A stretch of DNA of 64,000 nucleotides, from IMG/VR virus record IMGVR_UViG_3300024239_000014, positions 62,001 through 126,000 of that record; one strand, given 5' to 3'. The notes beneath the pieces are model-generated. The model was not told where the DNA came from. It saw only the letters and a program-made list of their open reading frames with translations, and ran no database searches. The first letter of the stretch is position 1. Each line of letters opens with the position of its first letter. Below are positions 2,477 to 31,922 of this stretch, piece by piece. The translations under genes and the position numbers were made by a program.

Positions 2477-3877
2477 ATGATCACCGGCTTCATCCAATAT
2501 ACATCATTGCACGACCATGTTTCAGGTAACGTGGCCGTCTTGGGCGAACTGTCTGAATACAGCGCCACATACGCCATCGAGAACACCGTTCACGATATTC
2601 CCGCTACCTATCCGGGGATTCAGTTTGTCTCGTTCCGCAACCGTGGCCGGATCACCAATCCGGTACCCGCCGCGCCAACGTACGATCAGGTAAACCGCAT
2701 CCTTCAGATCGCTCACTGGATCTATGAAGAAGCGTCCGGCGGGTTCTTTACCGACGACCGTACAACCGCACTCCAGGCCTTCATGGCTGAATTTGATGCA
2801 GTGGGTACGGAATTCTCCATTGGTCAGATGGTGACCAACGGCAGCATTTATATGCCGGAATGGGTCTCCTGGAAAAACGTCGTCGACGATGGTAGCGGTA
2901 ACATGATTCCGAGTACACCGTTTAAGGTGTGGCTCTGTGATCAATCATTCCGTAACCAGTACAGCCAGTACGACATCGCGTTTGTCCCACCGGTCGCCAA
3001 CCTTGATGTACTCCACGGTTCCCGTACCCAGGTGCAAACCGCCCTGGGCGCCAAGACCATGGCACAGCTGATGCGTGACATCAAAGCCATCAAGAACAAG
3101 AACCCTGATACCGAGGTACAGACCCTCGAATACGAATGGGTCGATAAACTCGACCCTACCTTCAAGATCATGACCAATTGGTCGGTGATCATCTGGGGTG
3201 CAGCTGCGTTTAACGAAGACATCATCCGCGACGAGATGATGGAGTATATCCTGGATAACTCCACTTTCCCGCGGTCTGAATGGGAAGCAGTTCTTCCGGA
3301 CATGTTTGTGTCGACGGAGTTCCTCTTCGTTCCGAATTGGGACCAATACGCTATCCCAAACCAGACACTCCAGACAGGGATCTATTCGCCACTGGCTAAG
3401 CCGGGCGAGCTGGAGTTGCTTGGTGTTAAAGGGATGCCAGCGCTGTCGGAAGCACATCGTTCAGCGTACTTGCGTGCCGGGGTACACCCGTACCGCAGTA
3501 TTGGTTTTGTGGTTTGCGGCGGTGAACGCAATCTCAACGCTGTGTACGATTTTTCAGCCAAGTTCCCTGACTACTTCACCGTGCAGTCCACCACCCACGT
3601 CGACTTCAACCGCATGAGCCCTTCAACCCAGCAATGGTACATGAAGTTCAGCCAGGCGCTTAATGAAGCCGAGAAGATGGACGAGTCGTCAGAAGTCCCA
3701 CAAGGCTTTTCGCGTCTGACCCGTAACAACCTTTACTACATCAGCTTCAACTTCGAGCGCGTGCAGTATCTGGTGTTGCTCAAGAAGGGTCAGTCGGCCG
3801 ATACGCCCATCCCATCCGACTTCACCGGTTGGCTGCGCGTTGATGGGACGTGGGTACAGCATACCTCCGGGGGTTAA
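2477..3877 (+). CDS. Putative virion structural protein (jumbo-phage type)
   Basis: Long clean ORF; start MITGFIQ after GAGGA. Position between RNase H and SbcC resembles phiKZ-like structural genes; function is inference. Confidence 0.6.
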   Translation: MITGFIQYTSLHDHVSGNVAVLGELSEYSATYAIENTVHDIPATYPGIQFVSFRNRGRITNPVPAAPTYDQVNRILQIAHWIYEEASGGFFTDDRTTALQAFMAEFDAVGTEFSIGQMVTNGSIYMPEWVSWKNVVDDGSGNMIPSTPFKVWLCDQSFRNQYSQYDIAFVPPVANLDVLHGSRTQVQTALGAKTMAQLMRDIKAIKNKNPDTEVQTLEYEWVDKLDPTFKIMTNWSVIIWGAAAFNEDIIRDEMMEYILDNSTFPRSEWEAVLPDMFVSTEFLFVPNWDQYAIPNQTLQTGIYSPLAKPGELELLGVKGMPALSEAHRSAYLRAGVHPYRSIGFVVCGGERNLNAVYDFSAKFPDYFTVQSTTHVDFNRMSPSTQQWYMKFSQALNEAEKMDESSEVPQGFSRLTRNNLYYISFNFERVQYLVLLKKGQSADTPIPSDFTGWLRVDGTWVQHTSGG

Positions 3878-9251: not shown

Positions 9252-10508
9252 TTAATCAACCCGGTAGGTGATCTCAACGCTGTCGATATCGATGACCCTT
9301 GCGTTAACAAACCATCTGGGTAACCCAGTGGCTTCATAGTCAACAATCACGCCGGTTTTCTCGTACCGGTAAGTATCGATAACCTTTCTCGGTTCGCGGT
9401 AGTGTTCCATCGCAACCACGTACTTGCCGTGCTCAGGAAACACCAGATACTCTGGCAATATCCCATGCGCACCCTGCACCATCCCAACGATGTGGTGATC
9501 TGCTAGATACCGACCGGGTAGTCCTGTGTGCTCCAGTGTTCTGTAAGAAATCTGAAGATTAGGCGCATCAAGCAGTACCAAGAAGCTTTGTGACAATTGC
9601 AGCATGGCACGAACAGTGTCGTCGCTGGTCAGTTCAGCATAACTACGTCGACTGTCAGTCGGGTCATCATCGATCGTGTCGATTGGTAACGAAGATAAGT
9701 CGATCAACGCATTGCTTTGGTAATACCGTTCTACCCACGGCAACCGGTTGATCTTCACCATCACTGTGTCTTCAGACACCTTTACCAGCGTGTCGTTCAT
9801 CACATGCAAATAGCCGCCTAACACCACCATTGGTGTTTTCCCTTCAAAGGGGGTTGGGAATTTGATGTAGACGTTATCTTTCATCTGGTGACGTGTCGTT
9901 GGCTTCAGAATCTGGTTTGCTGCGATACTGAAGGTTTCAAGCTTGCCGATGTCCTGAAAGTCCAGAATACCAACCTGGTTGCTTTTAGCCACCCGAACAC
10001 TCTTCATTCCATCCACAATGTACAATCCGTGAATAGACGGGATTGCACGGTGAATCAGTCCGTTCACGGTAACGAGACAGTAATCGTGAATATCGACTGG
10101 GTCGGTACCTTCGCGTGACATCAACACATCAGTTTGTTCATATTCCGACAATTCAGTATCGGGATGTACCGTGTGTTTGGTTGGCTTGAAGTGGTAGTTA
10201 GCGGCAAAGGCGTCACCGCAGCGCAACGATTTCTTGGTCAACACCGGCACGCCATCATGGTGCGGTAGAGCACCGGAACCATTGATCAATAACCAATTGG
10301 TGAATGAAACAGATTCATTGACCAGTGCGTCGCGGATATCTTCGAGATGAACCGTCACACGTGTCGGTAACGATACATGGAATAAAACGAACATCACATC
10401 GCGATAGAGTCGGCAGATTTCACTGCAGGTCATTGCTGCAACGTCGACCTCTACCCAAGGTGATCCGGGGTTAACAGATTTCCCCAATGCATATCGATAC
10501 TGATACAT
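9252..10508 (-). CDS. Putative virion structural protein
   Basis: 418-aa clean ORF divergent from the fibre cluster; function inferred from context. Confidence 0.6.
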   Translation of the reverse strand: MYQYRYALGKSVNPGSPWVEVDVAAMTCSEICRLYRDVMFVLFHVSLPTRVTVHLEDIRDALVNESVSFTNWLLINGSGALPHHDGVPVLTKKSLRCGDAFAANYHFKPTKHTVHPDTELSEYEQTDVLMSREGTDPVDIHDYCLVTVNGLIHRAIPSIHGLYIVDGMKSVRVAKSNQVGILDFQDIGKLETFSIAANQILKPTTRHQMKDNVYIKFPTPFEGKTPMVVLGGYLHVMNDTLVKVSEDTVMVKINRLPWVERYYQSNALIDLSSLPIDTIDDDPTDSRRSYAELTSDDTVRAMLQLSQSFLVLLDAPNLQISYRTLEHTGLPGRYLADHHIVGMVQGAHGILPEYLVFPEHGKYVVAMEHYREPRKVIDTYRYEKTGVIVDYEATGLPRWFVNARVIDIDSVEITYRVD

Positions 10509-10653
10509 GGCAGTTCCTCAAACTAAGGATAAAGGGTAGGGCGGTTTATCGTATGGTACCTACCCTCTGACGGTAACATTCAGCCATAGATTGAGAGGGT
10601 GAAATACGCTTTTTATTCCCCCATTCAGTCCGATGGTCCACACGGAGTCGCCC

Positions 10654-12576
10654 ATGATCGTAAAGAATTTTGCATGGCCCCTTGACCCTCACGCGTCAAG
10701 CGTAGACAACTACATCAAGGGCGAACGTCATGTTATCACTGCTGCCAACGGCAGCTCGTACCGCGTTATCATGCCTCGCGGTGCCCCTTTCTTTGTTAAA
10801 GACCTGAAGGTCACCTTTGTTCCCATGAATCGCGTTCTTCAAGAGAACGTCGATTATGCACTTGGTTACCAGTTTGAATTGATTAGTCGCCGTACCTACA
10901 TGCCGGTGTTCTGCGGTATTGTGATCCTCGACCACACCCTTTCCGGTACCTTTGAAATCGAGTACCGCACCCTAGGTGGTGAATTTACTCTGGATCAGCA
11001 GTCACTGGCCACGCTGCTGTCCAATGCCATTACCGATCCGCGCACCACCAGCTGGGAAGCGTTGACCGAAGTGCCGTGGTACTTCACGCCTATTGAGCAC
11101 CGCTTTGACGTGCAGGATATGGTCGGGATGTCCGGCGTGGTGGCTGCGGTTGACCGTATTTCTGCTGCACTGGCCGCACGTGAAACCGAAAATGAACTCT
11201 TGATTGAGCACATTCAGGAAACCAATAATCCGCACGGGACGGATAAAGAGCAGATTGGCTTGGGTCTTGTCCCGAACTGTCGCATGGCCACCGAGGCCGA
11301 AGCGTTGGCCATGCTTCGTACAGACCTCTTCTTGTCTCCGGCACACATGGCGATCGTACTGGCCCGGTTGAACAGCGAGACAGTGGCTGGTCATGCGGCC
11401 GACCGCAATAACCCACACTTCGTGACCAAGGCGCAGGTGGGTCTGCCGAATGTCGATAACTTCCCGACAGCAAACGACACCCAAGCGATCGACGTCAATA
11501 ATGACAACACTTTCGTGACACCACGTAAAGTGTGGCTCATGATTTCGACACGGGTGTTGGCGGCCATCAACGGTCACATCGCTGCTACCGGGAACGTCCA
11601 CGGATTGAATAAAGGCGATATCGGTTTGGACAAGGTGTCCAACATCGGTAAGGCCTCAGCTGTGGAGCTGGATAACCCGGCCAACCTGGATACTCATTAT
11701 CCGACCATTGCAGGTGTGGTGCGCATCTTTAACCGCATCTTCGGCGATGCCTTTACGTCTCACGCAGGCGCCAGTAACCCGCACAGGACAAGTAAAGGAG
11801 ACATCGGTCTCGGCGAAGTCCCGAACTACGCGGTTGCCGGTGCGGCAGAAGCGTTGTCCAACAGCGGTTCTCACTTTTCGACACCTCTGACAACTTACCT
11901 CCAGATCCAAGCGTTTGGCGGCGGCGTCGCTGAGGTCGAGAATAAGGTTGACGTTACCGGTACCTTTACGACCGATGACTTGAACAAGTACCTGCGCATT
12001 GCTCAGCCGTCGGATGGTACGTACTACGTTGGTCCCGATGCTACGGCTAACTGGCCAGACCATGCCACCTTGAACTTGCGTGCAGCTGGCCCTGGGATCT
12101 TGACCTTGGCCGGTAGTGGTGGGGTAACCCTCCATGCGCCAGCTGGTGGTAGCCTTCGTTTGGCGCCGGGTATGGCTGTATCGCTTAAACGCATCGCAGT
12201 CGATTCCTGGGATGTAATCGGCCAGACGATCAGTACTACGCCGGTGGGTACAGGTAATTCACGCATTGTCGTTAAGACACTCACTGACGTGGCTTACACG
12301 TTTGGTTTGGACGATGATGGGTCCTACCTGCGCCCAGATACCGACGTAGTATCTGAATACACCGTCCCGTCTCAAGCGGTTGTAGCTTGGGAGAATGATA
12401 CCGAAATCCATCTCCATAAGGCGGGTGTGAGTACGCTTATTCTAGCGGCTATGCCAGGAGTGACGCTCAATCCACCGGCTGATGGCACACTCCAGGTTGG
12501 ACCGTCGATGACGGTGGTTCTCAAACGTGTCGGTGTCAACATCTGGGATGTCGTCGGCCAGACCATCAGTCTGTGA
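10654..12576 (+). CDS. Tail fibre / baseplate-anchored fibre protein
   Basis: N-terminal WPLDP..ERH..APFF anchor domain, paralogous to the 29844 gene. Four NPH-x-x-K-x-x-[IV]GL repeats and two tandem ~95-aa C-terminal domains ending LKR-x-x-x-x-x-WDV-x-GQT. Confidence 0.75.
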   Translation: MIVKNFAWPLDPHASSVDNYIKGERHVITAANGSSYRVIMPRGAPFFVKDLKVTFVPMNRVLQENVDYALGYQFELISRRTYMPVFCGIVILDHTLSGTFEIEYRTLGGEFTLDQQSLATLLSNAITDPRTTSWEALTEVPWYFTPIEHRFDVQDMVGMSGVVAAVDRISAALAARETENELLIEHIQETNNPHGTDKEQIGLGLVPNCRMATEAEALAMLRTDLFLSPAHMAIVLARLNSETVAGHAADRNNPHFVTKAQVGLPNVDNFPTANDTQAIDVNNDNTFVTPRKVWLMISTRVLAAINGHIAATGNVHGLNKGDIGLDKVSNIGKASAVELDNPANLDTHYPTIAGVVRIFNRIFGDAFTSHAGASNPHRTSKGDIGLGEVPNYAVAGAAEALSNSGSHFSTPLTTYLQIQAFGGGVAEVENKVDVTGTFTTDDLNKYLRIAQPSDGTYYVGPDATANWPDHATLNLRAAGPGILTLAGSGGVTLHAPAGGSLRLAPGMAVSLKRIAVDSWDVIGQTISTTPVGTGNSRIVVKTLTDVAYTFGLDDDGSYLRPDTDVVSEYTVPSQAVVAWENDTEIHLHKAGVSTLILAAMPGVTLNPPADGTLQVGPSMTVVLKRVGVNIWDVVGQTISL

Positions 12577-20590: not shown

Positions 20591-23038
20591 GTGAGCGCTG
20601 CACAGAAACTACTGGATATGATCAACCGGGATAACCCCGGTGCCAATCTGGTGCTCAACGACGTTGTGATTGCTCAGGCTGAAGACAACACCAACACGCT
20701 GGTTCAACGCGATACCACAGTGCTGGTTTACTCCGGTCCTAGTCGGCGGATGAAAGGTTCAATCCGCATTTGGTATAACCGATTGGACCTCAATGCGCTG
20801 TTCTTGAACATCGATGCCAGCATCAACTACGAAATCCCGGTCGATACGGGTATCGTCTACACCACTCACCACATCCTGCCTATCTTTAACGAGAAGTACG
20901 GTCTGGATCTTCAGTTAGCCGATGTTCTCCCGCAACCACTGACAGTGGTCAACGGCGTAGGTCGTGCCACCATCATGGCAACCCCCGGCAATCCCGCCTG
21001 GAAAGGCTTCGTGGAGTTTACCTTCGGTACCAGTATCCCGTCGTTGTCCCAGGTAATTCTGACTACGACCCTGACTTCCTTTAACCTCATTGGTGATGAT
21101 CCAACCAAAGGTCAGGCGGCGGTGTACTCGTACAACCTCAACGGCACCGACGACCCCGATTTCTTCTGGCAGCAGCTCAATGAAGGTCAGGTCACCGAAG
21201 AACTGGTCGAGCACTTCAACCTGCTTCAGGGTCTGGGTGCTACCTGGGTACATACACCCACTCCGAGTCCGTATAACCTGTACGGCGCTACGGTGGATTA
21301 CAGCGGTGACAATGAAGTTGGTTCCGTACCGTCAAACATCATCCAACCACTGAACCCCGTGTTCGACAACGTGGCCATCATCACTCTTTCAGCCACCTAT
21401 TGCGTGAACTTCGCCGGTAAGCTGACGGTGTATTCCAATGACGTGGTGATTGTTGAACCAACTCCAGATTGGCACACCAGCCATTACACATTGGAAGGAA
21501 TGGTCGGTAATAATGCATGGTTGACTGATACCCAGCTGTTCGTCGACTCGTCCATTAAGCTGGTGCCGCAGGCATCTCTGGTGGCTGGCAAACGACCACT
21601 GGAAGTTCACTTCGACATTATCAACTTCGGTATCGATGCGGGTGCTGAAGGTGGTAGCGGTTGGACGTTGCGGATCACGGCCCATAATGCAGCTGATGTT
21701 ATTTTGGGTAGCGCTGATGTCACATCCGATGGCGTGACCGTCCTTGAAATCGACAACCATGACCACGATATTGCGTATTTTCTATTCAACGACCAGGTGG
21801 GTAATGGCGGCTGTCATGCTACTATTATCAGCGTTGCACTGAGCGGTGTTTACGTTCCCCCGGTCGACCCTGAGGAGCCTGTCGATCCGGAAGAACCTGG
21901 TACTGAAGTCGGTGCCTTTGTGTTCCGCATGGTGCCGACCGTTGCCGGCACACTGGATAGCGAACTGCGACTTGGTGGTCACGATCCGGATTATGCAGTC
22001 ACCATGACCGATGCTCAGGGTACCGAACTCGTCATAGACATCGGCACCAGCCTGACATTGACTGGTGGTATGCCAACACAGCGCCAGATCTTCGAAGACT
22101 TCTCGACTGCTGAAATCGGTGTCAAGATCGATGCGCGCGCCGAACTCGGTACCTGGGATACAGCAGACTCACTGCAGATGACCAACGGGGTTTACCAGCC
22201 AGGTGGTCGTAACGGCCGTCCATGTATCTACTTCTACGACCATCGCTACGACACGAAAGCTCGCCGTGACTTCATGATTCCTGAAGGGTTTGATGAAGTG
22301 TTCTTCGGTGCGGCATTCCGTGTTCCTGCTGGTAAAGCCTTCACGGGCGCTAACCAGTACTGGCCCAATAGTACACCGATCCCTGAGACGTTCGTAAACC
22401 GTTCGTCCTGGAAGGTGCTCTGGTGTGATTACGGTGATGATGGCGGTTTGAATGGTTCTGACTTCATCCTACCGTCCTATGCGCAAGATGACGCCATGAT
22501 GCTCTTTGGTGGTAACTCCCACACTGTGGGTGCGACTGCTTCGTCGCTGAAGCCGTCGTCGTTCTGGCACTTTGGTGAAGGTTGGAACTGTGGCCGCTTC
22601 TGGGTGAAGCACAACGCCGCCACACCACTGCTCGGCATCATCCACCAGGAATGGTTTACACCCAAAGCCACTACCCGGTCTGAAGGTCAAGGCAGCATCC
22701 TCGATGATGTCGCCAATCCAACCAAGTTCACTCAGGGTGCGCTCTGTAAGTGGATCGAAGGGAACGACCTGTGTCAAGTAATCGGTGGTGAGTCCTACGT
22801 GGCTATCGGCGAGAATGCACCCTGCCGTGTAGAGATCGGGGACCATCCCGATTACTACAAGAACCGTCAACTTGCACTGTGCCCACCTCTGCTATGGGAT
22901 AAAGTGAACAAGCGTATTCGCGCCCGCCGCAACAACGGCGACTTTGTGCCCGGCAAACCGCAGTTTGTGTTTGTCATCCTCGAAAACAACCTACCACTGA
23001 GCCGTTATGGGCTTCTGTGGCGTCCGGAGGACGTGTAA
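20591..23038 (+). CDS. Virion fibre/adaptor protein with phiKZ gp131-type N-terminus
   Basis: KLLDMINRDN..RDTTVLV..GSIRIWYNRLDLNALF anchor motif, acidic Pro linker PVDPEEPVDPEEP, lectin-like beta-sandwich C-terminus. Confidence 0.7.
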   Translation: MSAAQKLLDMINRDNPGANLVLNDVVIAQAEDNTNTLVQRDTTVLVYSGPSRRMKGSIRIWYNRLDLNALFLNIDASINYEIPVDTGIVYTTHHILPIFNEKYGLDLQLADVLPQPLTVVNGVGRATIMATPGNPAWKGFVEFTFGTSIPSLSQVILTTTLTSFNLIGDDPTKGQAAVYSYNLNGTDDPDFFWQQLNEGQVTEELVEHFNLLQGLGATWVHTPTPSPYNLYGATVDYSGDNEVGSVPSNIIQPLNPVFDNVAIITLSATYCVNFAGKLTVYSNDVVIVEPTPDWHTSHYTLEGMVGNNAWLTDTQLFVDSSIKLVPQASLVAGKRPLEVHFDIINFGIDAGAEGGSGWTLRITAHNAADVILGSADVTSDGVTVLEIDNHDHDIAYFLFNDQVGNGGCHATIISVALSGVYVPPVDPEEPVDPEEPGTEVGAFVFRMVPTVAGTLDSELRLGGHDPDYAVTMTDAQGTELVIDIGTSLTLTGGMPTQRQIFEDFSTAEIGVKIDARAELGTWDTADSLQMTNGVYQPGGRNGRPCIYFYDHRYDTKARRDFMIPEGFDEVFFGAAFRVPAGKAFTGANQYWPNSTPIPETFVNRSSWKVLWCDYGDDGGLNGSDFILPSYAQDDAMMLFGGNSHTVGATASSLKPSSFWHFGEGWNCGRFWVKHNAATPLLGIIHQEWFTPKATTRSEGQGSILDDVANPTKFTQGALCKWIEGNDLCQVIGGESYVAIGENAPCRVEIGDHPDYYKNRQLALCPPLLWDKVNKRIRARRNNGDFVPGKPQFVFVILENNLPLSRYGLLWRPEDV

Positions 23039-26000
23039 TGCCGATTATCTATCTGGGTAACCAAGCACCCACAGCCGCAACACCAGTAAGGGTGTATGTC
23101 CGCAACACGAACCTGTTATTGGCGAGTACTGCGCCATATCGTGCCGCCGAAGGCGATGTCATCACTTCGATCTACATCACGCGCGGTGACAACATCAACG
23201 CCAGTGGCAGCTTTAAGGGTGTCATTTACGTTTCAGACGTCGACGATATCGCAACAGCCACTCTGTTGAAGGTTGTTGCGTTTCCGCTGGTAACGGCGCC
23301 GGCGTGGTCGATGCAAAAGACCACCATTGAACCGGTACCGCTGGTGTCTGGTAAGTACTACTGGTTCGCGTTCCGCAACTTCCCCGGTGCGTATGTGGCT
23401 AAACCAGGCACCATGACCCATCAGAGCGCACTTGCAACTATCCTCTCCACCGACCCGGATCACCCGAGTCTGGCTGGTCTGACGTTCACTAACGTCAGTG
23501 GTGGGTGTTTGGTCGGCTTTGAAGCCATGAACTTGTTTGGTCGCGATACCGTTATTCTCGGCAGTGCTCAGACATCTCCGAACAATCACATTGCTCGTGA
23601 TGCTGCTCAATACCGTGCCGAAAACGTTCGAGTACGTTTCGGCGAATTCACCAACCGCGGTATCCGTGTAGAAGTACGTACCAATGGATCGTTCATGATC
23701 CATGGGGAGGGTAACCACACCTTCCCGGTGCAGTTCTCAACCGATAGCGGCAATACCTGGTCGCCTGAACAAGCAGTCACCGTTCGCGATGCTACTGTGG
23801 CTGCACCGGTGACCACACCTAACCGTCCGCCGGTGGTGGCAGGTGCTGCTGTGTTGCCGGTAATGCAAATCAATGCAGATAACACCCTGACCGCCTCGTC
23901 ACTCCTGCAAGGGGCTACTGACGCCGACGGTAATGCAATGGTTATCGAAGATCTGGTATTGACCGCAGGTGTAGCCACGATCACTGGTACTGGCCCGTGG
24001 GTGGTGCGTCCGACCACGTCTGCTCAGCTCACGTTCGGTTATACCGTGTCTGACGGCAACGGTGGTACAGTGCAACAGACCGCTACGGCACTGGTCAACC
24101 GTCCGCCGGTATCGTCCGGTGTACTGTCTCTTGCCAACACAGATGTTGGTGTTGGTCTTGTGGTATCGACCAACGACCTTCTTGCCAACGTCAGCGACCC
24201 AGATGGTGATGCACTGACAATCACCAACGTTGTGGTAACCATGGGTACAGGTACCGTCACCGGCACTGGCCCGTATACCATCACCGGTACTGCAGCAGGG
24301 ACCCTACAGCTCGCTGTGACCGTGTCCGATGGGCGCGGCGGTACCGTGGTACAACAGGTAAGCATGCAGGCTGTAACCCCGATGGTGGTTGCTCAGAACC
24401 TCGCTGTCTTTAACGGTACCTCGGCCTATTCGACGATCGAGAATTGGGCGCCAACTGGGAAGTATGGTGTTTACGCTGTGTTCGATACCATCCCGACTGT
24501 TCAGGATGCGTACCTGCTAGTGGATTCGAACAACCGGTACATCTCGGTGCTCGGTAACCAAGGTAAAGCGCAGTTTGGGGCTCTGTTTCCAGCAGCTACG
24601 CTGCCACAGTTGCCGGTAACCAAGTACTTCAGCGCTATCGTTGAAAACGGCAAGGTAACGTTCAGCGACGGCGTGAACGATGTCTCCGTCACCGATCCCG
24701 AAATCACGCTTGGATCTACTTATAGCGTCATTGGTAAGCGCGGTAGCGTATTCTCCAACATGTCGCTGTCAACTCTGATCCTATTTGATTTCCAGACGGA
24801 GTCCAACAGCCGGGTGTACCGTGCCGATGCTTCTGGTCAGCTTCTGTCAATTGTGGCAGGCAAAGCAAACCCAGCCAACATCAACTTGACTGCAGCGGGT
24901 ACGCCCAATGCGATGTACGAACCGGCAGAACTAACCAACATCAACACCGCGGCAGCATGGTCAACGTGGTATGACTCCACCTTCACCGGTGGTCTGGTTC
25001 CATCGCGTATCACCAGTCCTACGCGTGTGTCTGATTTCGGTACGTTGTTCTCAGGCGCCGGCCAAGCCTGGCTTCAGACTTTTGTAGCCATGCACCGTCT
25101 GACTGGCAGCGACATCTACCTGACCCGCGCGAAGGATCTGGTAGACTACATGTTCAACTACACCGACGATAAGCGCCTGTCGCGCAGCGAGATTCATCTG
25201 ACAACCACTCCGGAAGATGACCGCTATGTGGAAGCGCCTAAACAGTACCTGTACACCGGCGATGGTGGTACCCGTGTTACTGGGCTGGCCGCTAAAGGCT
25301 GGCGCCGTCACAACGGCACTGGGTGGGTTGTGGATGTGCAGACTTCTGGTCTGATTGCTTCCGGGATCGCTCGTCTGGCCGATTACATGTTGTCACAAAC
25401 CAACCTGTCGTCGTACCACGTTTGGGCGGCTCAGGTGCTGACGGATCTCCGTCCAATCCTGAATGAACACGACACCAGCTGGTCGGATACCAAGAACACC
25501 GTCAGTGTGGGCGGTTTCTGGTATTACCTCAACGTGATTGATGGTGCCCAGAATGCTAATAGCTTCGGGGATACCGGGAAGCTGAGCAATCCGCTGCCAT
25601 TCAACCATGGGTTGCCGATGGGTGTGGCTATGGCCATTATCAATCGCTGGCAGACCGTACCGACCTACAACACCAAAGCTGCTGCTGTGGTTGATTTCTT
25701 CCGCCGTCATTGGTGGGCAGGTACCAACAGCGATCGTCTGTGGTGGGCAGGTTGGGATGTCACAGCCAACAACCGTAAAACGGTGGATGTGGCGACTGCT
25801 GCTAATGTTGACGTGCCGTCGGTCTACTGGCTCCACAAGCTGGGTTACAACTTCTCGCAAGCGGAAGTCGTGGCTATGGCTCGCGGTATCTTGGGCGCCG
25901 AATACGCAGGTACCGGTGTGCTCCATAACCGCATTGATCGCGTGGCGAAAGATGTTGGTGACGACTTCGCCAAAGATGATGCGGCGCAAGCAGTCGGCCA

Positions 26001-28239
26001 GTTCCTGTTGTCGGTCCAGCAACTCGACTCCTCGCTCTACAGGCTGGCTAAGCGCGCCATGCGCCGCTATCTGACCCGCCCGGTGTCTAACAGCACTGCT
26101 TGGGGCGTTTACGCTGTGGCTGCTTTTGATCTGCTGGTACAAGGCGCCAAAACCGATCTCTTTGGTGCTTACGATGTTAGTCCCACGGTTACGAACGCAG
26201 CACCGACTGGTACTGCAAGTATTAACTTGGGTCAAAGCAATGTTGGCGACATCATTGAAATCACCCCTGCCGTACTCTTGGCCGGTATTACGGATGCCGA
26301 CGGCGACCCGCTGACTGTGGTTGATTTGGAAATCATCTCCGGTACTGGTGTACTTGAGTCGGTTGCCAGCAACCCGCCCACTGTAACCGGCCCTGTCAGT
26401 CTGGCTGGCCCTATCGAGGGTCAGAGCATCGTTGTTGAAGTCGAAACGCTTCTCGAGGGTGCTGTAGACCCAGATGGCGATGTGTTGAGTGTGCGTAACG
26501 TATCGGTTGTTTCTGGCCCCATTACGATTTCTGGCACAGGTCCGTATACCGTCACCGCCACTGGCGTTGGCGCAGCGACACTGAGTTACGAAATCACTGA
26601 CGGTACAGGCAACACCCTTGCTCAGACTGCGACCATGACTACTCGCGCAGCGCCTGTGCTGAGCGGTACAGTACCTGTTGTTAGTGGGTTCACGGGTACG
26701 GTTGCAACTGGTCAGACGATCCGTGTCTCCGGTAGTAACCTGGCGTTGTCTCCGACCATTCTGGCAATCAAAGGTAACGAAGCAGCCGCCGGCACCAAGG
26801 TGGCCGACCACGCGCCATTTGGTCTGTTGGAGCATGGCCCTGTACCAGATACTTGGCGCTTTGCAGGCGACGGCACGATCGTGCTGACAGGTCAGGTATC
26901 TGATGTGGTGGAAGTGTACAAAGTCTTCCCGACGAAGAAGCACTCCGTCTTCGCGCATTACCATCTTCGTTACGAAAATGTGATGCCGAGAGCGAACTTC
27001 CCAGTTGGCGCACAGACTAAGGAACTCCGGTTCAGTCCGAATCAGAGCAACCTCCACAGCACCGGCCTCGTAATTGGTACTGGCTGGAATGCCATTGCCG
27101 ACCAGCTCTGGATCTACACCGGCGGCGGTAGCAATACCACCATCAGCGGTATGACCAAAGAAATGGCTGAGCAGTGGCACACACGCTCAACAGGTGCGAA
27201 GGTCACCAATGGTGTCGCCGTTCTGTCGAATATCGTATCAGGGCCCCTTACTGGTCAGCGGTATAACGAAAACGTTAGCGTCGCAGCCGATTACGACGGC
27301 TTTGGCAATGTGCTGATGCCGTTCTTCATTCGCGACGGTCTGACGCTCGATATGCGCATCCGCAACCTGATCGTACTTGACGGTTACGCTCGTGTCGAAT
27401 TGGGTAACCGCCCGAACCGTGCTGAGTGTACGATTCAGGATACGCAGTACGCTGCCATGGCTGGTAGCGACATTGACGTGAACCTGGATCTGAGCATGTT
27501 CTCTAGTAATGACGACATTTACTTGTTCGCCATTAACGAAGATAACGTGTATTCAAACGCCATCAAGATTCGTGACAAGCAGGTGGTGGCCTACAACCGT
27601 ATTGCCGATACGCTCGGCCTGTCTCGCGCCATGAATAACGGCGCGAGTTATCTCACCATGGATACTGCGTACGCAGCGTCTGTGCTTGAGAAGGCTTGGG
27701 TCGATTACCGGATTGGGTTCAAGGTCAATGGCTGGAATTCCACAACGTCGACCGAAACCGATCTTGGCTTCAGTGCCAGCTTGGCTTCGGCCAGCCGTGG
27801 TAACCTGGCCGTCAACCGGACCACAGGTGCAGTGACGCTCAAATCTCAAGTGAACAACGTTTCGGTAACTGTAGCAACTGTTAACCCAGCGACCTTCTTG
27901 GGTAACCGGTACGATTGGGTGCTGCGGATTCCGAAGAACACCGGTGAGATGATCCAGCTGTATAACGAAACAGTGGCTGATGGTCTGGTGCTCCTGGGTG
28001 AGGTGGCTCGTCCGGCAACGTTCGACAACTTTGCACCTGAGCGCTGGATGGCAGGTTACAGCAGCGCGCGCATGAATGGCGTGCTGTACTACCTGGGTTG
28101 TTTCGGTCACGATGGTCTGCCGATCTTCGATCTGCGTTTGAACGAAGGTTCTGGCCTGGTCGCTTACTCGGAAGGCGGGGTGGTCGCTCAGGCAACCATC
28201 AGTCAGAGTGGTGCGTCCATGACCTGGGTCACGGCGTAA
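23038..28239 (+). CDS. Giant modular receptor-binding protein: cadherin-like repeats, LamG-like domains, helical enzyme-like domain
   Basis: About 1733 aa; start overlaps the previous stop. Repeats N-x-PP..LL..D-[AP]-DG-[DN]..GTGP[WY]..[ST]DG-x-G at 23821, 24097, 26194 (half) and 26371. Confidence 0.8.
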   Translation: MPIIYLGNQAPTAATPVRVYVRNTNLLLASTAPYRAAEGDVITSIYITRGDNINASGSFKGVIYVSDVDDIATATLLKVVAFPLVTAPAWSMQKTTIEPVPLVSGKYYWFAFRNFPGAYVAKPGTMTHQSALATILSTDPDHPSLAGLTFTNVSGGCLVGFEAMNLFGRDTVILGSAQTSPNNHIARDAAQYRAENVRVRFGEFTNRGIRVEVRTNGSFMIHGEGNHTFPVQFSTDSGNTWSPEQAVTVRDATVAAPVTTPNRPPVVAGAAVLPVMQINADNTLTASSLLQGATDADGNAMVIEDLVLTAGVATITGTGPWVVRPTTSAQLTFGYTVSDGNGGTVQQTATALVNRPPVSSGVLSLANTDVGVGLVVSTNDLLANVSDPDGDALTITNVVVTMGTGTVTGTGPYTITGTAAGTLQLAVTVSDGRGGTVVQQVSMQAVTPMVVAQNLAVFNGTSAYSTIENWAPTGKYGVYAVFDTIPTVQDAYLLVDSNNRYISVLGNQGKAQFGALFPAATLPQLPVTKYFSAIVENGKVTFSDGVNDVSVTDPEITLGSTYSVIGKRGSVFSNMSLSTLILFDFQTESNSRVYRADASGQLLSIVAGKANPANINLTAAGTPNAMYEPAELTNINTAAAWSTWYDSTFTGGLVPSRITSPTRVSDFGTLFSGAGQAWLQTFVAMHRLTGSDIYLTRAKDLVDYMFNYTDDKRLSRSEIHLTTTPEDDRYVEAPKQYLYTGDGGTRVTGLAAKGWRRHNGTGWVVDVQTSGLIASGIARLADYMLSQTNLSSYHVWAAQVLTDLRPILNEHDTSWSDTKNTVSVGGFWYYLNVIDGAQNANSFGDTGKLSNPLPFNHGLPMGVAMAIINRWQTVPTYNTKAAAVVDFFRRHWWAGTNSDRLWWAGWDVTANNRKTVDVATAANVDVPSVYWLHKLGYNFSQAEVVAMARGILGAEYAGTGVLHNRIDRVAKDVGDDFAKDDAAQAVGQFLLSVQQLDSSLYRLAKRAMRRYLTRPVSNSTAWGVYAVAAFDLLVQGAKTDLFGAYDVSPTVTNAAPTGTASINLGQSNVGDIIEITPAVLLAGITDADGDPLTVVDLEIISGTGVLESVASNPPTVTGPVSLAGPIEGQSIVVEVETLLEGAVDPDGDVLSVRNVSVVSGPITISGTGPYTVTATGVGAATLSYEITDGTGNTLAQTATMTTRAAPVLSGTVPVVSGFTGTVATGQTIRVSGSNLALSPTILAIKGNEAAAGTKVADHAPFGLLEHGPVPDTWRFAGDGTIVLTGQVSDVVEVYKVFPTKKHSVFAHYHLRYENVMPRANFPVGAQTKELRFSPNQSNLHSTGLVIGTGWNAIADQLWIYTGGGSNTTISGMTKEMAEQWHTRSTGAKVTNGVAVLSNIVSGPLTGQRYNENVSVAADYDGFGNVLMPFFIRDGLTLDMRIRNLIVLDGYARVELGNRPNRAECTIQDTQYAAMAGSDIDVNLDLSMFSSNDDIYLFAINEDNVYSNAIKIRDKQVVAYNRIADTLGLSRAMNNGASYLTMDTAYAASVLEKAWVDYRIGFKVNGWNSTTSTETDLGFSASLASASRGNLAVNRTTGAVTLKSQVNNVSVTVATVNPATFLGNRYDWVLRIPKNTGEMIQLYNETVADGLVLLGEVARPATFDNFAPERWMAGYSSARMNGVLYYLGCFGHDGLPIFDLRLNEGSGLVAYSEGGVVAQATISQSGASMTWVTA

Positions 28240-28253
28240 CTCGATGTTTGGTC

Positions 28254-28290
28254 AGCTACGCTTGGGAAAAGGGTTTTCCTAGGCGTAGCT
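28254..28290 (+). terminator. Long hairpin between the two cadherin-fibre genes
   Basis: 17-bp stem with two G-U pairs and a GGG loop: AGCTACGCTTGGGAAAA-GGG-TTTTCCTAGGCGTAGCT. Confidence 0.7.
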
Positions 28291-28326
28291 TTCCTCATCT
28301 AACGTATTTTAAAGGAGGGTTTAGAC

Positions 28327-29709
28327 ATGCCGGTTATTGCAACACCGCCAGGTCAGCATCCAGGTCCGTGGCAGCTCACGATCCCTGAAGCAGGGTCGGT
28401 AACACTGCGGTACCGCGTTTCAGACGGTAAAGGCGGGTTCTTCACTCGCACGGCCATCGCATCTGCCATCGTACCTGTGGTCGGGTATGACTACTACGCC
28501 AATAAGTTCGGCCTCTATCGCAAAACTGTGAACTCGCTGGCCGCGTTTTTGACAGTGCCATCTCACTCGGTCGTTGCGGGCACAGTGTCCGACGAATGGC
28601 GGTTCGGTATCAAACTTAAAACCTGGGAGCCTTACACAGCTGGTACCCAAGGCATTGCTTGTCTATGTCGAGGTACGACGTCGAACACAGAAGAGGTCTT
28701 CATCATCAGTAACCTGGGACCGATCTCGATCAAGTATGTCGGCGGTACCACGGTAACTTTGACTGGAAACCATGGGATTCAACTTGGTCAGCGCGTTGAT
28801 TTTCGTTTGATTGTACCGTCAGTTGTCGGTCAACCAATCGAACTTTACGCCAGGATTAACAACGGCGCTGAATTTCTGATGGGTAGTGCGCTGACGCCTG
28901 CATCGTCTGGATTCAATCCGAATCGTTGGCTCTCCGGTAACCAGGGCATCAACGGGATGCTGTTCTACGTAGAGCGGTATCGTGATGGCGTACCTCTTTA
29001 CCAGTTCACGTTTAATGACTTCTGGTCCACGACGTTCTTGTCGCGTCACGATCCTCAGGTAACCGCAGTCTTGACAAAAGTCAGCGGCCACATTGAGCCT
29101 CAGGTGGATGTCACTGAATGGACGCCAGCGACGCCGGCTGACGACTTAGTCGCTGTAACACGTGTCACGACGGCGTCGCTGTCGGTCGATCGACGGATGG
29201 TGCTGACGGGTATTAGCGCACGACCTGCTGGCGTTGCCAGGCGTTATCTGTCGTGGGTGCGCACTCACGACCTGACGTACGACCTGGGTCTTTGCAGTAT
29301 CGGCACCACCGAAACCGTTCGGTTCAATGCCGATGGATCGATCAGCGCGCGTGTTACTGGCATGAGCAGCACTGTCGTAATGCGACCTGCCGGTCCTCAT
29401 GTCTTGACGGGCACGAAGCAGTTGATCGAATTGGTCGTGACTGATGACCGTTTCCAGGTCAAGGTGGATGGTGTGTTGGTTGCTGAACACGTGGCCAATG
29501 GTCTGTCGTTCATTCCTGGCCAATACCTGGAAGGTGCGTCTGGTACCACCATCTGGCGCGGTCGCCTGTACAACCTCGCAGTGTACAACGACGACACCCT
29601 GATTGAGTACTGGCCATTGGATGTAGGCGAAGGAGTCGGTGTAATGACCAACACAGTTGGTACTGCTGTTGCGACATTGGGTTCTGCCAATACGTGGGTC
29701 CACGGATAA
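28327..29709 (+). CDS. Fibre-associated protein: half cadherin-like repeat plus two LamG-like domains
   Basis: AAGGAGG SD. Starts GPWQLT..TLRYRVSDGKGG; next domain is paralogous to the C-terminus of the 23038 gene; C-terminal FQVKVDG..WRGRLYNLAVY..YWPLD. Confidence 0.75.
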   Translation: MPVIATPPGQHPGPWQLTIPEAGSVTLRYRVSDGKGGFFTRTAIASAIVPVVGYDYYANKFGLYRKTVNSLAAFLTVPSHSVVAGTVSDEWRFGIKLKTWEPYTAGTQGIACLCRGTTSNTEEVFIISNLGPISIKYVGGTTVTLTGNHGIQLGQRVDFRLIVPSVVGQPIELYARINNGAEFLMGSALTPASSGFNPNRWLSGNQGINGMLFYVERYRDGVPLYQFTFNDFWSTTFLSRHDPQVTAVLTKVSGHIEPQVDVTEWTPATPADDLVAVTRVTTASLSVDRRMVLTGISARPAGVARRYLSWVRTHDLTYDLGLCSIGTTETVRFNADGSISARVTGMSSTVVMRPAGPHVLTGTKQLIELVVTDDRFQVKVDGVLVAEHVANGLSFIPGQYLEGASGTTIWRGRLYNLAVYNDDTLIEYWPLDVGEGVGVMTNTVGTAVATLGSANTWVHG

Positions 29710-29718
29710 GTGTCATAG

Positions 29719-29755
29719 CGGGAGGGTCGAAAAGACCCTCCCGTTTTTTCTTTTT
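29719..29755 (+). terminator. Intrinsic terminator
   Basis: CGGGAGGGTC-GAAAA-GACCCTCCCG plus long U-tract. Confidence 0.85.
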
Positions 29756-29843
29756 GCTTATGTAAAAAATTACCGAATTTATATGAACGGCTTCGTTTTT
29801 CATACCGACCAGGCAGGTAACGTCCCCTTACAGGAGCAGAGAG

Positions 29844-31922
29844 ATGCCTCAGAATTTGGTGATTAAGTACCCTCTTGACCTGTCAGGGAATAACCCCACG
29901 AACCTGGTCAAGAATGAACCGCACACGATTGAGCCTACGGCCACGAATCGCGGTTTTGCATTGAACTACGGCCCTTTCTACACCAAGAGTGTAGTGGTCA
30001 AACACGTGGAATCAGGGAACTACCTGAGACCACGCCTGGATTACCTGTGCCTCCATCTGGATGAAATCGCTACGCGTGAATCTGGATACGAGGTCTGCAT
30101 CGCCATCCTCATTACCAACCAGACCTACAATGGTGAATTTGAAGTCACCTATCAGGTCGTGGGTGGCGAGTACAGTAGCTACGTGTCAGTGATTCAGCAG
30201 CTGGTAGAAGCACTCCAGCTCGATGACCGTCCTGTCAAGTGGGGCGATGTGATTGGTAAGCAGGATGAATACCCACCTGCGCCACACCTGCATACCCCGG
30301 ATGATCTGTACGGCTTTGAATTCCTTGTTGACGCATTGATGCGTCTGCACCAGGCGATTCTGCACGGCGATGCAACAGATCATGCGCAGATGAGACAAAA
30401 CATTCTCAATGCGCGCGCTTACGCCGAGCAATTGGCCGCCGGTGTACGCGAAGTCCTCGATCTTCACGTTACCAACCAGAACGATCCTCACAACGTCACT
30501 AAACTCCAGGTGGGTTTGGGGAATGTCGATAACTTTGCTACCGCCACGCCAGAAGAAGCGGCCAGTGCAACGGTGGCTAATAAGTTCCTGACGCCAGCGT
30601 TGTTGCATGGGGCAATACCGAACAGTTTGCCGATTACCCAGATCAATGGCGAAATTCAGCGTTTGTGGGACGCCATCAACGCCATCAACGCCATCCTCGC
30701 CCTCGGCAAGGGCACCACCACGATCTGGAACACCCTGACTGCGTGGTCGACACTGCGTCAGACGATGGCGGTGGCAAGTCGTAGCACGACTGTGCTTATC
30801 CCGGCTGGCCCGGATCGAACCAGTTCGTGGAATACTTCTTTCACAACTGCGTGGTCGTCTGATCGCCTGACAAACCGCATGACATCCATCGGTAGCAACT
30901 GGAACACGTCCTTCACTCAGAACACGACACGAACTACAAACGTGTCGGTGGTGACGGTATGGAACACCAATACGTCCCGCAACACCGGGTACAGTAAGGT
31001 GACCCAGACGTCTGAGAATATCGTGCAGAACACGTCAGTGTCATCAAGTAAGATCACGTCGTATCAGACCAGTTGGACGACGGAGATGGGGGTGGTAACC
31101 CGTACTTCTTCGTGGGTGACCGGTTTCTATTCGATCGCTTATATCGGACGTGAAACGTCGACTACAAACTACCAACAAGTATGGCAGGAACAGTCGAAGA
31201 ACACGAACACGTCGTGGTACAGTTACACTCCCATTGTGTCGTACCGTGCAGATGGGGCCGGCGGTAACGGGTGGCAAACGGTAGGTTTTACCCGTACGCT
31301 TAAATCACGTACGACGTCAACGACCGTAGGGCCGAGCAGCCGTGCCACGCAAACGACCTTTGCCACTGAATGGACCAGTGGTGGTTTCCGTCAGATGATC
31401 ATGACATGGAAAACCACGAGTACGCAGATTGGTGGCAACGTGTCGGCGTATGTCAGTACGACCTTCAACACTAACTTCTACACTGCGTTCCCGAAAGAAA
31501 GGTCCACATCGACCACAGTCTCGTCGCCGAACCTGGTACCTATGAGTCGCCAGACCAGCAAAACGACCAACACCACATTTAGTCGTGTGACATCGTTTAA
31601 CCAATCGCGCGACACCACCACGGCATGGACCATTGCTACGTCTTGGGCTACTCAGTATTCCAAGACAACCGCATGGGATCGTACCACGGACGTGATCACC
31701 AACATTGTTCAACAGACCAGTAATGCAGCAATGGTGCAAACCAACTTCAATACTGCTGTTGCAATGTCCAAAAGTACATCTGTGGTCACATCTGTGACAG
31801 TGGCTGGAGATAGCGAACGCCATAGTTCACGCCAGACCTCTTGGGATTCGACGTGGGGTACTGAGGCGAACACCAGCCAGATGACCCAGTTCATCCGCAA
31901 CACGCAGACGAGCTTTACGTAA
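29844..31922 (+). CDS. Virion fibre with Thr/Ser-rich (mucin-like) C-terminal domain
   Basis: N-terminal KYPLDLSG..EPH..YGPFY anchor domain and DPHNVTKLQVGLGNVDN repeat; last 403 aa contain 155 Thr+Ser by hand count. Confidence 0.8.
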   Translation: MPQNLVIKYPLDLSGNNPTNLVKNEPHTIEPTATNRGFALNYGPFYTKSVVVKHVESGNYLRPRLDYLCLHLDEIATRESGYEVCIAILITNQTYNGEFEVTYQVVGGEYSSYVSVIQQLVEALQLDDRPVKWGDVIGKQDEYPPAPHLHTPDDLYGFEFLVDALMRLHQAILHGDATDHAQMRQNILNARAYAEQLAAGVREVLDLHVTNQNDPHNVTKLQVGLGNVDNFATATPEEAASATVANKFLTPALLHGAIPNSLPITQINGEIQRLWDAINAINAILALGKGTTTIWNTLTAWSTLRQTMAVASRSTTVLIPAGPDRTSSWNTSFTTAWSSDRLTNRMTSIGSNWNTSFTQNTTRTTNVSVVTVWNTNTSRNTGYSKVTQTSENIVQNTSVSSSKITSYQTSWTTEMGVVTRTSSWVTGFYSIAYIGRETSTTNYQQVWQEQSKNTNTSWYSYTPIVSYRADGAGGNGWQTVGFTRTLKSRTTSTTVGPSSRATQTTFATEWTSGGFRQMIMTWKTTSTQIGGNVSAYVSTTFNTNFYTAFPKERSTSTTVSSPNLVPMSRQTSKTTNTTFSRVTSFNQSRDTTTAWTIATSWATQYSKTTAWDRTTDVITNIVQQTSNAAMVQTNFNTAVAMSKSTSVVTSVTVAGDSERHSSRQTSWDSTWGTEANTSQMTQFIRNTQTSFT

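What the first reader, a model, noticed from the sequence alone, without database searches (positions are those of the whole stretch)
26194..28470. Cadherin-like domain split between two genes: possible fold-complementation branch point
Seen: intact repeats read N-x-PP..LL..D[AP]DG[DN]..[SM]G-x-x-x-[IV]-[TS]GTGP[WY]..[ST]DG-x-G..Q. The third repeat of the giant protein (26194-26370) stops right after ISGTGVL and jumps into repeat 4. The next gene (28327) begins with exactly the missing half: PGPWQLTIPEAGSVTLRYRVSDGKGGFFTRTAIAS. Both halves keep their consensus residues. Inference: the 460-aa protein docks onto the giant fibre by completing this Ig-like fold, building a branched receptor-binding complex, conceptually like pilus donor-strand complementation. 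The alternative is a relic of a ~2-kb insertion or duplication.
Basis: partly seen in the sequence, partly recalled or inferred. Interest (0 to 1): 0.78.

Follow-up and report, generated by a model that had tools for sequence, protein, structure and literature searches.

The report
Ig-like domain split across two phage genes
In a jumbo phage's tail-fibre gene cluster, one cadherin-like (Ig-fold) domain is cut in two, with its first four strands inside a 1733-residue protein and its last three strands at the start of the next, lectin-like protein; both halves are conserved in four phages, so they may re-join to dock the small protein onto the large one, but that docking is not yet shown.

Summary
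The giant gene (23038-28239) has three full Cadherin_5 repeats and one N-terminal half (26194-26370, profile positions 1-52 of 92). The next gene (28327-29709, own RBS and ATG) opens with the matching C-terminal half (residues 13-45, positions 58-90; E=2e-5 over the six-frame window). Four independent assemblies show the same split.

Origin:
- Distant homologues (P0021, P0023, P0024) have an intact cadherin domain directly before the same LamG-like domain.
- The giant's last ~620 residues align end to end with a stand-alone 648-aa protein (P0029), native stop included.
- So a complete module most likely landed inside a domain and split the gene.

Present function:
- Neither half is decaying. 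The N-terminal 57 codons of the 460-aa gene show 21 synonymous and 0 non-synonymous changes; the giant's half has dN/dS ~0.17, like intact repeats.
- In the fourth phage both halves diverge together.
- The split pair carries an unusual Glu/Arg pair and enhanced opposite net charge.

Fold complementation is the best single reading (~0.45), but no complex could be modelled. One AF2 model was uninformative; the other showed only a loosely attached N-terminal hairpin.

The parts
20591..23038 (+). 815-aa virion protein with an N-terminal DUF7941 domain. Its TAA stop overlaps the giant gene's ATG (TAATG), so the two are probably translationally coupled.
23038..28239 (+). Giant 1733-aa multidomain fibre-like protein. 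Domain order: N-terminal domain, two cadherin-like repeats, a LamG-like region, an alpha-helical domain (weak Pectate_lyase_2 hint), the half repeat, a full repeat, an IPT-like domain plus beta domain, and a C-terminal LamG-like domain.
23821..24372 (+). Intact cadherin-like repeats r1 (residues 262-353) and r2 (residues 354-445).
   Evidence: 127 and 121 bits, profile positions 1-92
26194..26370 (+). Half repeat r3h (residues 1053-1111). It holds strands A, B, C and C' of a Cadherin_5 domain, then the conserved linker LESVA(S/T). Net charge is -8.
26371..28239 (+). Inserted module: intact repeat r4 (26371-26643), IPT-like and beta domains, C-terminal LamG-like domain and its native stop. It aligns end to end with the stand-alone 648-aa protein P0029.
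28254..28290 (+). Perfect 17-bp hairpin in the 87-nt spacer. Its structure is conserved in L002 and L006; the L002 stem has an unrelated sequence. The U-tract is weak, so it is not a canonical terminator.
28311..28319 (+). Ribosome-binding site AAAGGAGGG, 7 nt before ATG 28327, identical in all four phages.
28327..29709 (+). 460-aa protein: 12-residue leader, C-terminal half of a cadherin-like domain, then two LamG/pentraxin-like lectin-fold domains (about residues 51-255 and 256-460).
28363..28467 (+). C-terminal half domain (residues 13-47): strands E, F and G, with 4 basic residues and net charge +2. It is invariant in three phages despite 21 synonymous changes.
29717..29755 (+). Canonical intrinsic terminator (12-bp GC-rich stem plus T-run) right after the 460-aa gene. 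The 815-aa, giant and 460-aa genes are therefore probably one transcription unit.

Best explanation
Origin (inferred, well supported). An ancestral fibre gene ended in [cadherin-like domain]-[LamG]-[LamG]. A complete receptor-binding module of the P0029 type landed inside that cadherin domain, between strands C' and E. The module was cadherin repeat, IPT-like domain, beta domain and LamG, with its own stop codon. The upstream part became the present 1733-aa protein, which carries the orphan A-B-C-C' half. The downstream part acquired a hairpin, a strong RBS and a 12-residue leader and became the 460-aa gene, which starts with the orphan E-F-G half.

Present function (inferred, not shown). The two halves re-associate during assembly. 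Strand E slots between B and C' in one sheet, and the F-G hairpin adds next to C in the other. This rebuilds one beta-sandwich and non-covalently hangs the 460-aa lectin-like protein on the side of the giant protein, so the fibre becomes branched with two different distal binding modules. Opposite charge (-8 on the acceptor half, +2 on the donor half) and a Glu/Arg pair not seen in intact repeats would help the fragments find and hold each other.
For: Split and complementarity. Strand map from the DSSP of r4.

Intact ancestral state. P0021, P0023 and P0024 have a full Cadherin_5 domain immediately followed by the LamG domain homologous to residues 51-255. Their alignment to the 460-aa protein starts at its residue 12.

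Inserted module. P0029 (648 aa) aligns with giant residues ~1105-1733 right up to the stop, at 32% identity.

Not relics. The first 57 codons of the 460-aa gene show 21 synonymous and 0 non-synonymous differences between the window and L002, against 26/17 in the next 57 codons. dN=0 at dS=0.65. The giant's half has dN/dS ~0.17, like intact repeats at 0.10-0.18. The Pfam score per position of the giant's half (about 0.53 bits) equals that of intact domains in the homologues.

The two halves change together. In L006 the giant's half is the most divergent segment: pN is 0.29-0.33 against 0.07-0.17 in both flanks. Only in L006 does the donor half change, at 8 residues.

Unusual residues. Among 41 non-redundant intact repeats, position 46 is never acidic and position 73 is never basic. 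The split pair has E46 and R73, and L006 has lost both (A46, S73). Charge is -8/-8/-9 with +2 in three phages and -5 with +1 in L006. None of the 41 intact C-halves has 4 basic residues.

Structure and expression. In the AF2 model of residues 1-260, the lectin domain is confident (pLDDT ~90). Residues 1-56 are a low-confidence hairpin (41-69) joined by a linker below 50, so they are not modelled with confidence as part of the protein's own fold. The genes are adjacent and share a terminator.
Against: No direct test of binding was possible. The single-chain AF2 model of the giant segment was uninformative (mean pLDDT 33), so packing of the giant's half against its own neighbours is not excluded.

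The two halves evolve at very different rates: the donor is invariant while the acceptor differs at about 24% of residues. This could mean the donor's main partner is something more conserved.

The DxDGD loop of the giant's half is relaxed in two phages (DADAD, and D-DDD with a deletion).

The joint divergence rests on one lineage (L006) among four related genomes. The proposed closeness of E46 and R73 rests on generic Ig-fold strand pairing, not on coordinates.

Only 64 kb of a 250-kb genome was scanned for other half domains. No un-split allele was found.
Confidence: 0.45

Rival explanations
1. The N-terminal 50 residues of the 460-aa protein are a true docking element, but their partner is not the giant's half repeat. 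The partner could be the very conserved IPT-like/beta region of the giant, the DUF7941 protein, or a baseplate protein outside the window. On this view the giant's half repeat is just a structured spacer that packs on its own neighbouring domains.
For: The donor half is invariant (dN=0), while the giant's half differs at about 24% of residues. The most conserved part of the giant is residues 1203-1515, with dN 0.08. N-terminal conserved peptides that dock on unrelated domains are the known rule in branched receptor-binding systems (PMC13352976). Only a quarter of the genome was scanned.
Against: This reading requires two orphan, mutually complementary half-sandwiches, each with a full set of exposed core hydrophobic residues, to be satisfied by two different unrelated partners. 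It does not explain why both halves diverge together in L006, nor the matched charge shift.
Confidence: 0.27
2. The half domains self-associate. For example, three E-F-G sheets of the 460-aa protein form a trimerisation element, and the giant's halves pair between subunits of an oligomeric giant protein. There is no contact between the two gene products through these segments.
For: Many phage fibres are trimers whose N-terminal beta structures intertwine. Strong conservation of the donor half would fit an oligomerisation core.
Against: The domain types here (Ig-like, LamG, alpha-helical enzyme-like) are typical of monomeric bead-on-string proteins. Like-charged halves (-8 with -8) would repel each other. 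This reading gives no reason for the joint divergence in L006.
Confidence: 0.1
3. The halves are pure scars of the insertion with no present role. The 460-aa protein works on its own, soluble or attached by its lectin domains, and the half domains are tolerated leftovers.
For: Insertion as the origin is well supported. The DxDGD loop of the giant's half is somewhat degraded in two phages.
Against: Zero non-synonymous against 21 synonymous changes in the donor half. dN/dS of the acceptor half equals that of intact repeats, at dS above 1. Both halves keep the family signature at full density. No frame-disrupting indels appear in four diverged genomes.
Confidence: 0.1
4. Artefact or one protein: the assembly is wrong, or the two genes are translated as one chain by read-through or frameshifting, so that the domain is merely interrupted by a nested insertion.
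For: The two genes are in the same reading frame, 5310 nt apart.
Against: Four independent assemblies agree. Two in-frame TAA stops, a 17-bp hairpin and a perfect RBS plus ATG are conserved. The giant's stop is the native C-terminus of the module, since homologues end at the same W-V-x-x position.
Confidence: 0.03

Closest known systems
Branched receptor-binding protein systems of Klebsiella and Escherichia phages (KP32, K11, KP34, CBA120, G7C). The T4 gp10-like branching domain of RBP1 binds the conserved N-terminal peptide of RBP2 (PMC13352976).
   Same: Two adjacent genes. The second protein has a short, highly conserved N-terminus followed by a variable binding body. The proposed result is a branched fibre with two specificities.
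   Different: No gp10-like branching domain was found in the giant protein. The proposed acceptor is half of an Ig-like domain and the donor is the other half, that is three strands of a shared fold rather than a peptide binding on the surface of a complete domain.
Donor-strand complementation or exchange in chaperone-usher pili, and related strand-insertion fibres such as type V pili and Ena appendages (from my own knowledge; the Ena preprint was only listed, not read).
   Same: An incomplete Ig-like beta-sandwich in one polypeptide is completed by N-terminal strand(s) of another, giving a very stable non-covalent link.
   Different: Pilins lack one strand (G) and need a chaperone and usher. 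Here three strands (E, F, G) are missing, no chaperone is evident, the link would be a single 1:1 side branch rather than a polymer, and the split arose by a cassette insertion.
Naturally split proteins that reassemble: split inteins such as DnaE-N/DnaE-C, Phd-Doc type fold complementation, and the split TcA subunit YenA1/YenA2 (PMC6486591, gene fission or fusion).
   Same: One fold is encoded by two genes, and the fragments stay associated. Split inteins also carry oppositely charged fragments (from my own knowledge).
   Different: Those are enzymes, toxin-antitoxin pairs or toxin shells. None is a phage fibre docking device, and none involves a cadherin-like domain.
Stand-alone cadherin-LamG phage proteins P0021, P0023 (in a P2-like phage), P0024 and P0029 (in a prophage).
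   Same: They share the Cadherin_5 domain and the LamG-like domain family. They are the nearest sequence relatives of both the 460-aa protein and the giant's C-terminal module.
   Different: Their cadherin domain is intact and lies in a single chain.

Membership tests
Pfam Cadherin_5 (PF17892) / Big_9 (PF17963) bacterial Ig-like domain | Match to the family profile above the curated cut-off | tested here: met
   The giant protein scores 154.8 bits over 4 stretches. The half repeat alone scores 29.9 bits against a 26.5-bit cut-off, but covers only profile positions 1-56 of 98.
Pfam Cadherin_5 (PF17892) / Big_9 (PF17963) bacterial Ig-like domain | The N-terminus of the 460-aa protein matches the C-terminal part of the profile | tested here: inconclusive
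   With Pfam it scores 15.4 bits (Cadherin_5 positions 72-93) and 14.7 bits (Big_9 positions 54-85), both below cut-off. It is significant with the locus-specific HMM: 19.4 bits, E=2e-5 over the whole six-frame window. Full-length homologues align from residue 12.
Pfam Cadherin_5 (PF17892) / Big_9 (PF17963) bacterial Ig-like domain | A complete seven-strand sandwich in one chain | tested here: not met
   Neither chain has it at this site. The giant carries positions 1-52 and the 460-aa protein carries positions 58-90.
LamG / pentraxin / concanavalin-A-like lectin fold (body of the 460-aa protein) | Structural match of a confident model to solved LamG or pentraxin domains | tested here: met
   AF2 gives pLDDT ~90 for residues 60-255. 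Foldseek against the PDB returns PTX3 pentraxin and the laminin alpha2 LG5 domain at probability 1.00, E about 2e-4, target TM 0.5-0.55. No Pfam family matches.
Branched RBP system (branching domain plus conserved peptide; Latka et al.) | T4 gp10-like branching domain in the primary protein | tested here: not met
   Pfam and PHROGs scans of the giant protein show only cadherin-type families.
Branched RBP system (branching domain plus conserved peptide; Latka et al.) | Conserved N-terminal docking segment on the secondary protein, with a variable body | tested here: met
   Residues 1-57 are identical in three phages, while the next domain is about 60% identical between the window and L002.
Branched RBP system (branching domain plus conserved peptide; Latka et al.) | Physical interaction of the two proteins, with both present in the virion | not testable with these tools
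   This needs a pull-down, virion proteomics or multimer modelling.
Donor-strand complementation (chaperone-usher type) | Acceptor Ig fold lacking exactly the C-terminal G strand; donor is a single N-terminal extension strand; periplasmic chaperone and usher genes present | tested here: not met
   Three strands are missing (with the strand map). No chaperone or usher families appear among the neighbours.

The most novel reading that the evidence does not exclude
A phage builds a branched receptor-binding fibre by trans-complementation of a naturally split Ig-like domain. The split was created in one step, when a complete receptor-binding module inserted into the middle of a domain. The orphan halves, tuned by opposite charge, now serve as a specific acceptor-donor pair. 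This would be a new docking principle for phage receptor-binding proteins and a general route by which module insertion immediately yields a two-chain, two-specificity fibre.
Probability: 0.4. Interest if true: 0.8.

Novelty: new variant of a known kind. Interest (0 to 1): 0.62.

Why it matters
Branched fibres let phages carry several receptor-binding proteins. The only docking pairs understood so far are gp10-like branching domains with short conserved peptides. A split beta-sandwich used as the connector would be a second, structurally different solution. It would also show how mosaic recombination can insert a new binding module without losing the old one, because the cut domain re-forms across the two chains. 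A small, natural, charge-matched split Ig domain of about 55 plus 35 residues could serve as a protein-ligation or docking tag. Even if docking fails, the locus is a clean, dated example of gene fission by cassette insertion within a domain, with both fragments held under selection.

Tried and rejected
- **Nucleotide and protein searches of the phage collection.** Queries with the giant and the 460-aa protein gave no match. Only the DUF7941 neighbour links the contig distantly to Erwinia/Salmonella-type jumbo phages.
- **Search for more relatives.** Locus searches in viral and metagenome contigs with the protein, an alignment and an exact DNA pattern returned only the window's own contig.
- **Search for an un-split allele.** A homologue search with giant residues 641-1111 found none.
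- **AF2 of giant residues 641-1733.** The alignment had 5 rows and the model reached mean pLDDT 33, so it says nothing about the half repeat.
- **First alignment of the full 460-aa protein (A2).** It mis-paired the two paralogous LamG domains and was discarded in favour of residues 1-260.
- **Which intact domain is nearest to each half.** No clear winner emerged; all lie at 35-46% identity. This neither proves nor disproves descent of both halves from one domain.
- **Direct repeats at the cassette borders.** None of note.
- **Recent tandem duplication.** Rejected. The LamG domain of the 460-aa protein and the giant's C-terminal LamG share only 27% identity.
- **Read-through fusion.** Rejected.
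- **Literature.** I found no report of a split Ig-like domain used for phage fibre docking in the searchable library.


Full report
**Context.** The window is part of a 249.6-kb uncultivated viral contig, IMGVR_UViG_3300024239_000014. It encodes many virion and tail-fibre-like proteins. One protein, with an N-terminal DUF7941 domain, is distantly related to virion proteins of Erwinia, Salmonella and Serratia jumbo phages.

The finding lies in a run of same-strand genes:
- an 815-aa DUF7941 protein (20591-23038);
- a 1733-aa protein (ATG 23038, stop 28239), whose start overlaps the previous stop as TAATG;
- a 460-aa protein (28327-29709);
- the only canonical intrinsic terminator of the region, at 29717-29745.

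**The observation.** The giant protein has four matches to Pfam Cadherin_5/Big_9. I built an HMM from the nine intact repeats of three related phages. It scores full-length matches at residues 262-353, 354-445 and 1112-1202 (120-127 bits). It also scores a partial match at residues 1053-1104, covering profile positions 1-52 of 92 (25.3 bits). After seven more residues (VLESVAS), the next full repeat begins.

The same HMM matches residues 13-45 of the 460-aa protein at profile positions 58-90 (19.4 bits). In all 1158 six-frame pieces of the window, this is the only other partial hit (E=2e-5). The only further hits are two full repeats in an unrelated 1227-aa protein on the minus strand.

Pfam gives the same complementary picture independently. 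The giant's half covers Cadherin_5 positions 1-56 of 98 at 29.9 bits, above the cut-off. The 460-aa N-terminus covers the last third of the profile, below the cut-off.

The DSSP of the one usable part of the giant-segment model (repeat r4) places the strands as follows, in profile positions: B 20-23, C 41-49, C' 52-55, E 60-64, F 68-77, G 83-92. The cut therefore falls between C' and E. The giant keeps A-B-C-C' and the small protein keeps E-F-G.

**The second gene is separate.** Between the genes lie two in-frame TAA codons and an 87-nt spacer. The spacer holds a perfect 17-bp hairpin and AAAGGAGGG 7 nt before the ATG. Both the hairpin and the RBS are present in the relatives. In L002 the hairpin has an entirely different stem sequence.

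**Relatives.** Searches of about 5.8 billion proteins, and a profile-free scan of 1.84 billion cluster representatives, found only three close relatives:
- L002 (ENA ERZ25038400; the 460-aa protein is 76% identical);
- L004 (Logan SRR27947107; 92% identical);
- L006 (JGI 3300035670, a 4.1-kb fragment; about 60% identical).

All three have the same half repeat in the giant and the same half domain at the start of the next gene. The four genomes are mosaics of one another.

**Origin of the split.** The representative scan found distant homologues of the 460-aa protein whose alignment starts at its residue 12-13, in the middle of a longer protein. In P0021 (693 aa), P0023 (681 aa) and P0024 (903 aa), a complete Cadherin_5 domain sits directly in front of the LamG-like domain homologous to residues 51-255. 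P0023 is encoded just upstream of gpV in a P2-like phage. The intact domain followed by LamG is therefore the usual, and most likely ancestral, arrangement.

Separately, P0029 (648 aa) lies in a prophage of assembly GCA_017425245.1. It aligns at 32% identity with the giant protein from the start of repeat r4 to the last residue. LamG modules of this family all end at the same W-V-x-x C-terminus.

The simplest history is that a whole P0029-type module, stop codon included, was inserted into the cadherin domain of a gene ending in cadherin-LamG-LamG. The downstream remainder then became an independent gene. No direct repeats mark the borders, and no un-split allele was found. The event is old, and its direction is inferred.

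A recent tandem duplication is excluded, because the paralogous LamG domains share only 27% identity.

**Are the halves relics?** They are not.
- Between the window and L002, the first 57 codons of the 460-aa gene carry 21 synonymous and 0 non-synonymous differences. The next 57 codons carry 26 and 17. By the Nei-Gojobori method, dN is 0 at dS 0.65.
- The giant's half repeat has dN about 0.2 and dN/dS about 0.17, in the range of intact repeats r1, r2 and r4 (0.10-0.18), at dS above 1.
- Its Pfam score per aligned position is the same as that of intact domains in the homologues.
- One sign of relaxation is the DxDGD loop, which reads DADAD in L002 and has lost a residue in L004.

**Signals that the halves belong together.**
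1. *L006.* On both sides of the half repeat, L006 is the closest relative of the window: 72-85% identity in the alpha-helical domain and 87% in r4. In the half repeat itself it is the most distant, at 61% against 76% for L002 and L004. Non-synonymous divergence there is 0.29-0.33 against 0.07-0.17 in the flanks. L006 is also the only phage in which the donor half differs, with changes G9S, E21A, A22D, S24Q, R28S, S46T, V49T and V51Q.
2. *Unusual residues.* Among 41 non-redundant intact repeats collected from all retrieved proteins, profile position 46 is T, S or V and never acidic. It is an outward-facing site on strand C. Position 73 is S, T, N or G and never basic. It is an outward-facing site on strand F. 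In three phages the split pair has Glu at 46 and Arg at 73 (R28), and L006 has Ala and Ser. C and F are neighbouring antiparallel strands in Ig-like sandwiches, so the two side chains are likely to be adjacent. That is an inference from the generic fold, because no coordinates were available.
3. *Charge.* The acceptor half has net charge -8, -8 and -9 in the three phages and -5 in L006. The donor half has +2 with four basic residues, and +1 in L006. Only 1 of 41 intact C-halves reaches +2, and none has four basic residues.

These three signals rest on few genomes and one divergent lineage. They are suggestive, not proof.

**Structure prediction.** An AF2 model of residues 1-260 of the 460-aa protein used a 12-row alignment and reached mean pLDDT 79.8. 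It gives a confident LamG/pentraxin-like domain (pLDDT about 90). Its Foldseek hits are the PTX3 pentraxin domain and laminin LG5, at probability 1.0. Residues 1-56 are a low-confidence beta hairpin (strands at 24-32 and 38-46, pLDDT 41-69) joined by a linker below 50. The model does not place the half domain with any confidence as part of the protein's own fold.

The model of giant residues 641-1733 failed (mean pLDDT 33). It says nothing about whether the acceptor half packs on its own neighbours.

**Conclusion.** Insertion of a module explains how the split arose. Fold complementation is the best explanation of why both halves are still under selection. I put it at about 0.45.

The main rival, at about 0.27, is that the invariant N-terminus docks somewhere else, in the manner of the conserved N-terminal peptides of secondary receptor-binding proteins in KP32-type phages (PMC13352976). 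Self-association, functionless scars and artefact are less likely.

The locus is not a member of the gp10-type branching system or of chaperone-usher donor-strand complementation. It would work like them in principle, but through a three-strand half of a cadherin-like domain.

Noticed in passing
window 28254-28290 (also L002 ~9926-9962 and L006 ~3330-3367): A long perfect hairpin sits between the giant and 460-aa genes (folding of the 94-nt spacer -34.8 kcal/mol, z=-4.5). Its structure is kept in all relatives, but the L002 stem has an unrelated sequence. The U-tract is weak, so it may be an attenuator or an mRNA-processing or stability element that sets the ratio of the two proteins.
   Followed up: partly
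window 29710-29843 compared with L002 11384-16454 and L004 6694 onward: L002 and L004 carry four extra genes between the 460-aa gene and the 691/692-aa virion protein: products of 222 aa, 305 aa (Polysacc_lyase PF14099), 550 aa and 521 aa. The window lacks them, so this is a variable receptor-binding or depolymerase cassette site.
   Followed up: partly
window 23038-29709 compared with L002, L004 and L006: The relatives are strongly mosaic. L002 and L004 are ~95% identical in the alpha-helical domain but only ~60% identical in the first LamG domain of the 460-aa gene, where L004 instead matches the window at 97%. Recombination breakpoints fall at domain borders.
   Followed up: partly
L009 10001-12046 (P0023) and L010 10001-11947 (P0029): Cadherin-LamG modules related to both parts of this locus occur as single genes in unrelated phages. 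One lies in a P2-like phage between HicAB-type toxin-antitoxin genes and gpV; that contig comes from the same ENA sample as L002. The other lies in a prophage between the lysis genes and the head genes. The module appears to move horizontally.
   Followed up: partly
window 49417-53100 (- strand): A 1227-aa protein carries two full cadherin-like repeats (69 bits each with the locus HMM) and a PHROG 'hydrolase' or tail-fibre match. It is a second cadherin-bearing virion protein in the same genome.
   Followed up: no
window 24958-26193: The alpha-helical domain of the giant protein (about 14 predicted helices) has a sub-threshold Pfam hit to Pectate_lyase_2 (E=0.009). It may be an alpha/alpha-toroid polysaccharide lyase, which would make the giant protein a depolymerase-bearing fibre.
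   Followed up: partly
P0020 (1170 aa): In another phage, a DUF7941 domain, a cadherin domain and a C-terminal LamG domain like the second LamG of the 460-aa protein are fused in one chain. This links the DUF7941 protein upstream of the giant gene (20591-23038) to the same module family.
   Followed up: no
window 10633-12576 and 29844-31922: Two paralogous virion proteins (647 aa and 692 aa) share a phrog_2163/13857 N-terminal domain and have different C-terminal parts. This looks like a second set of exchangeable fibre proteins on a common anchor.
   Followed up: no
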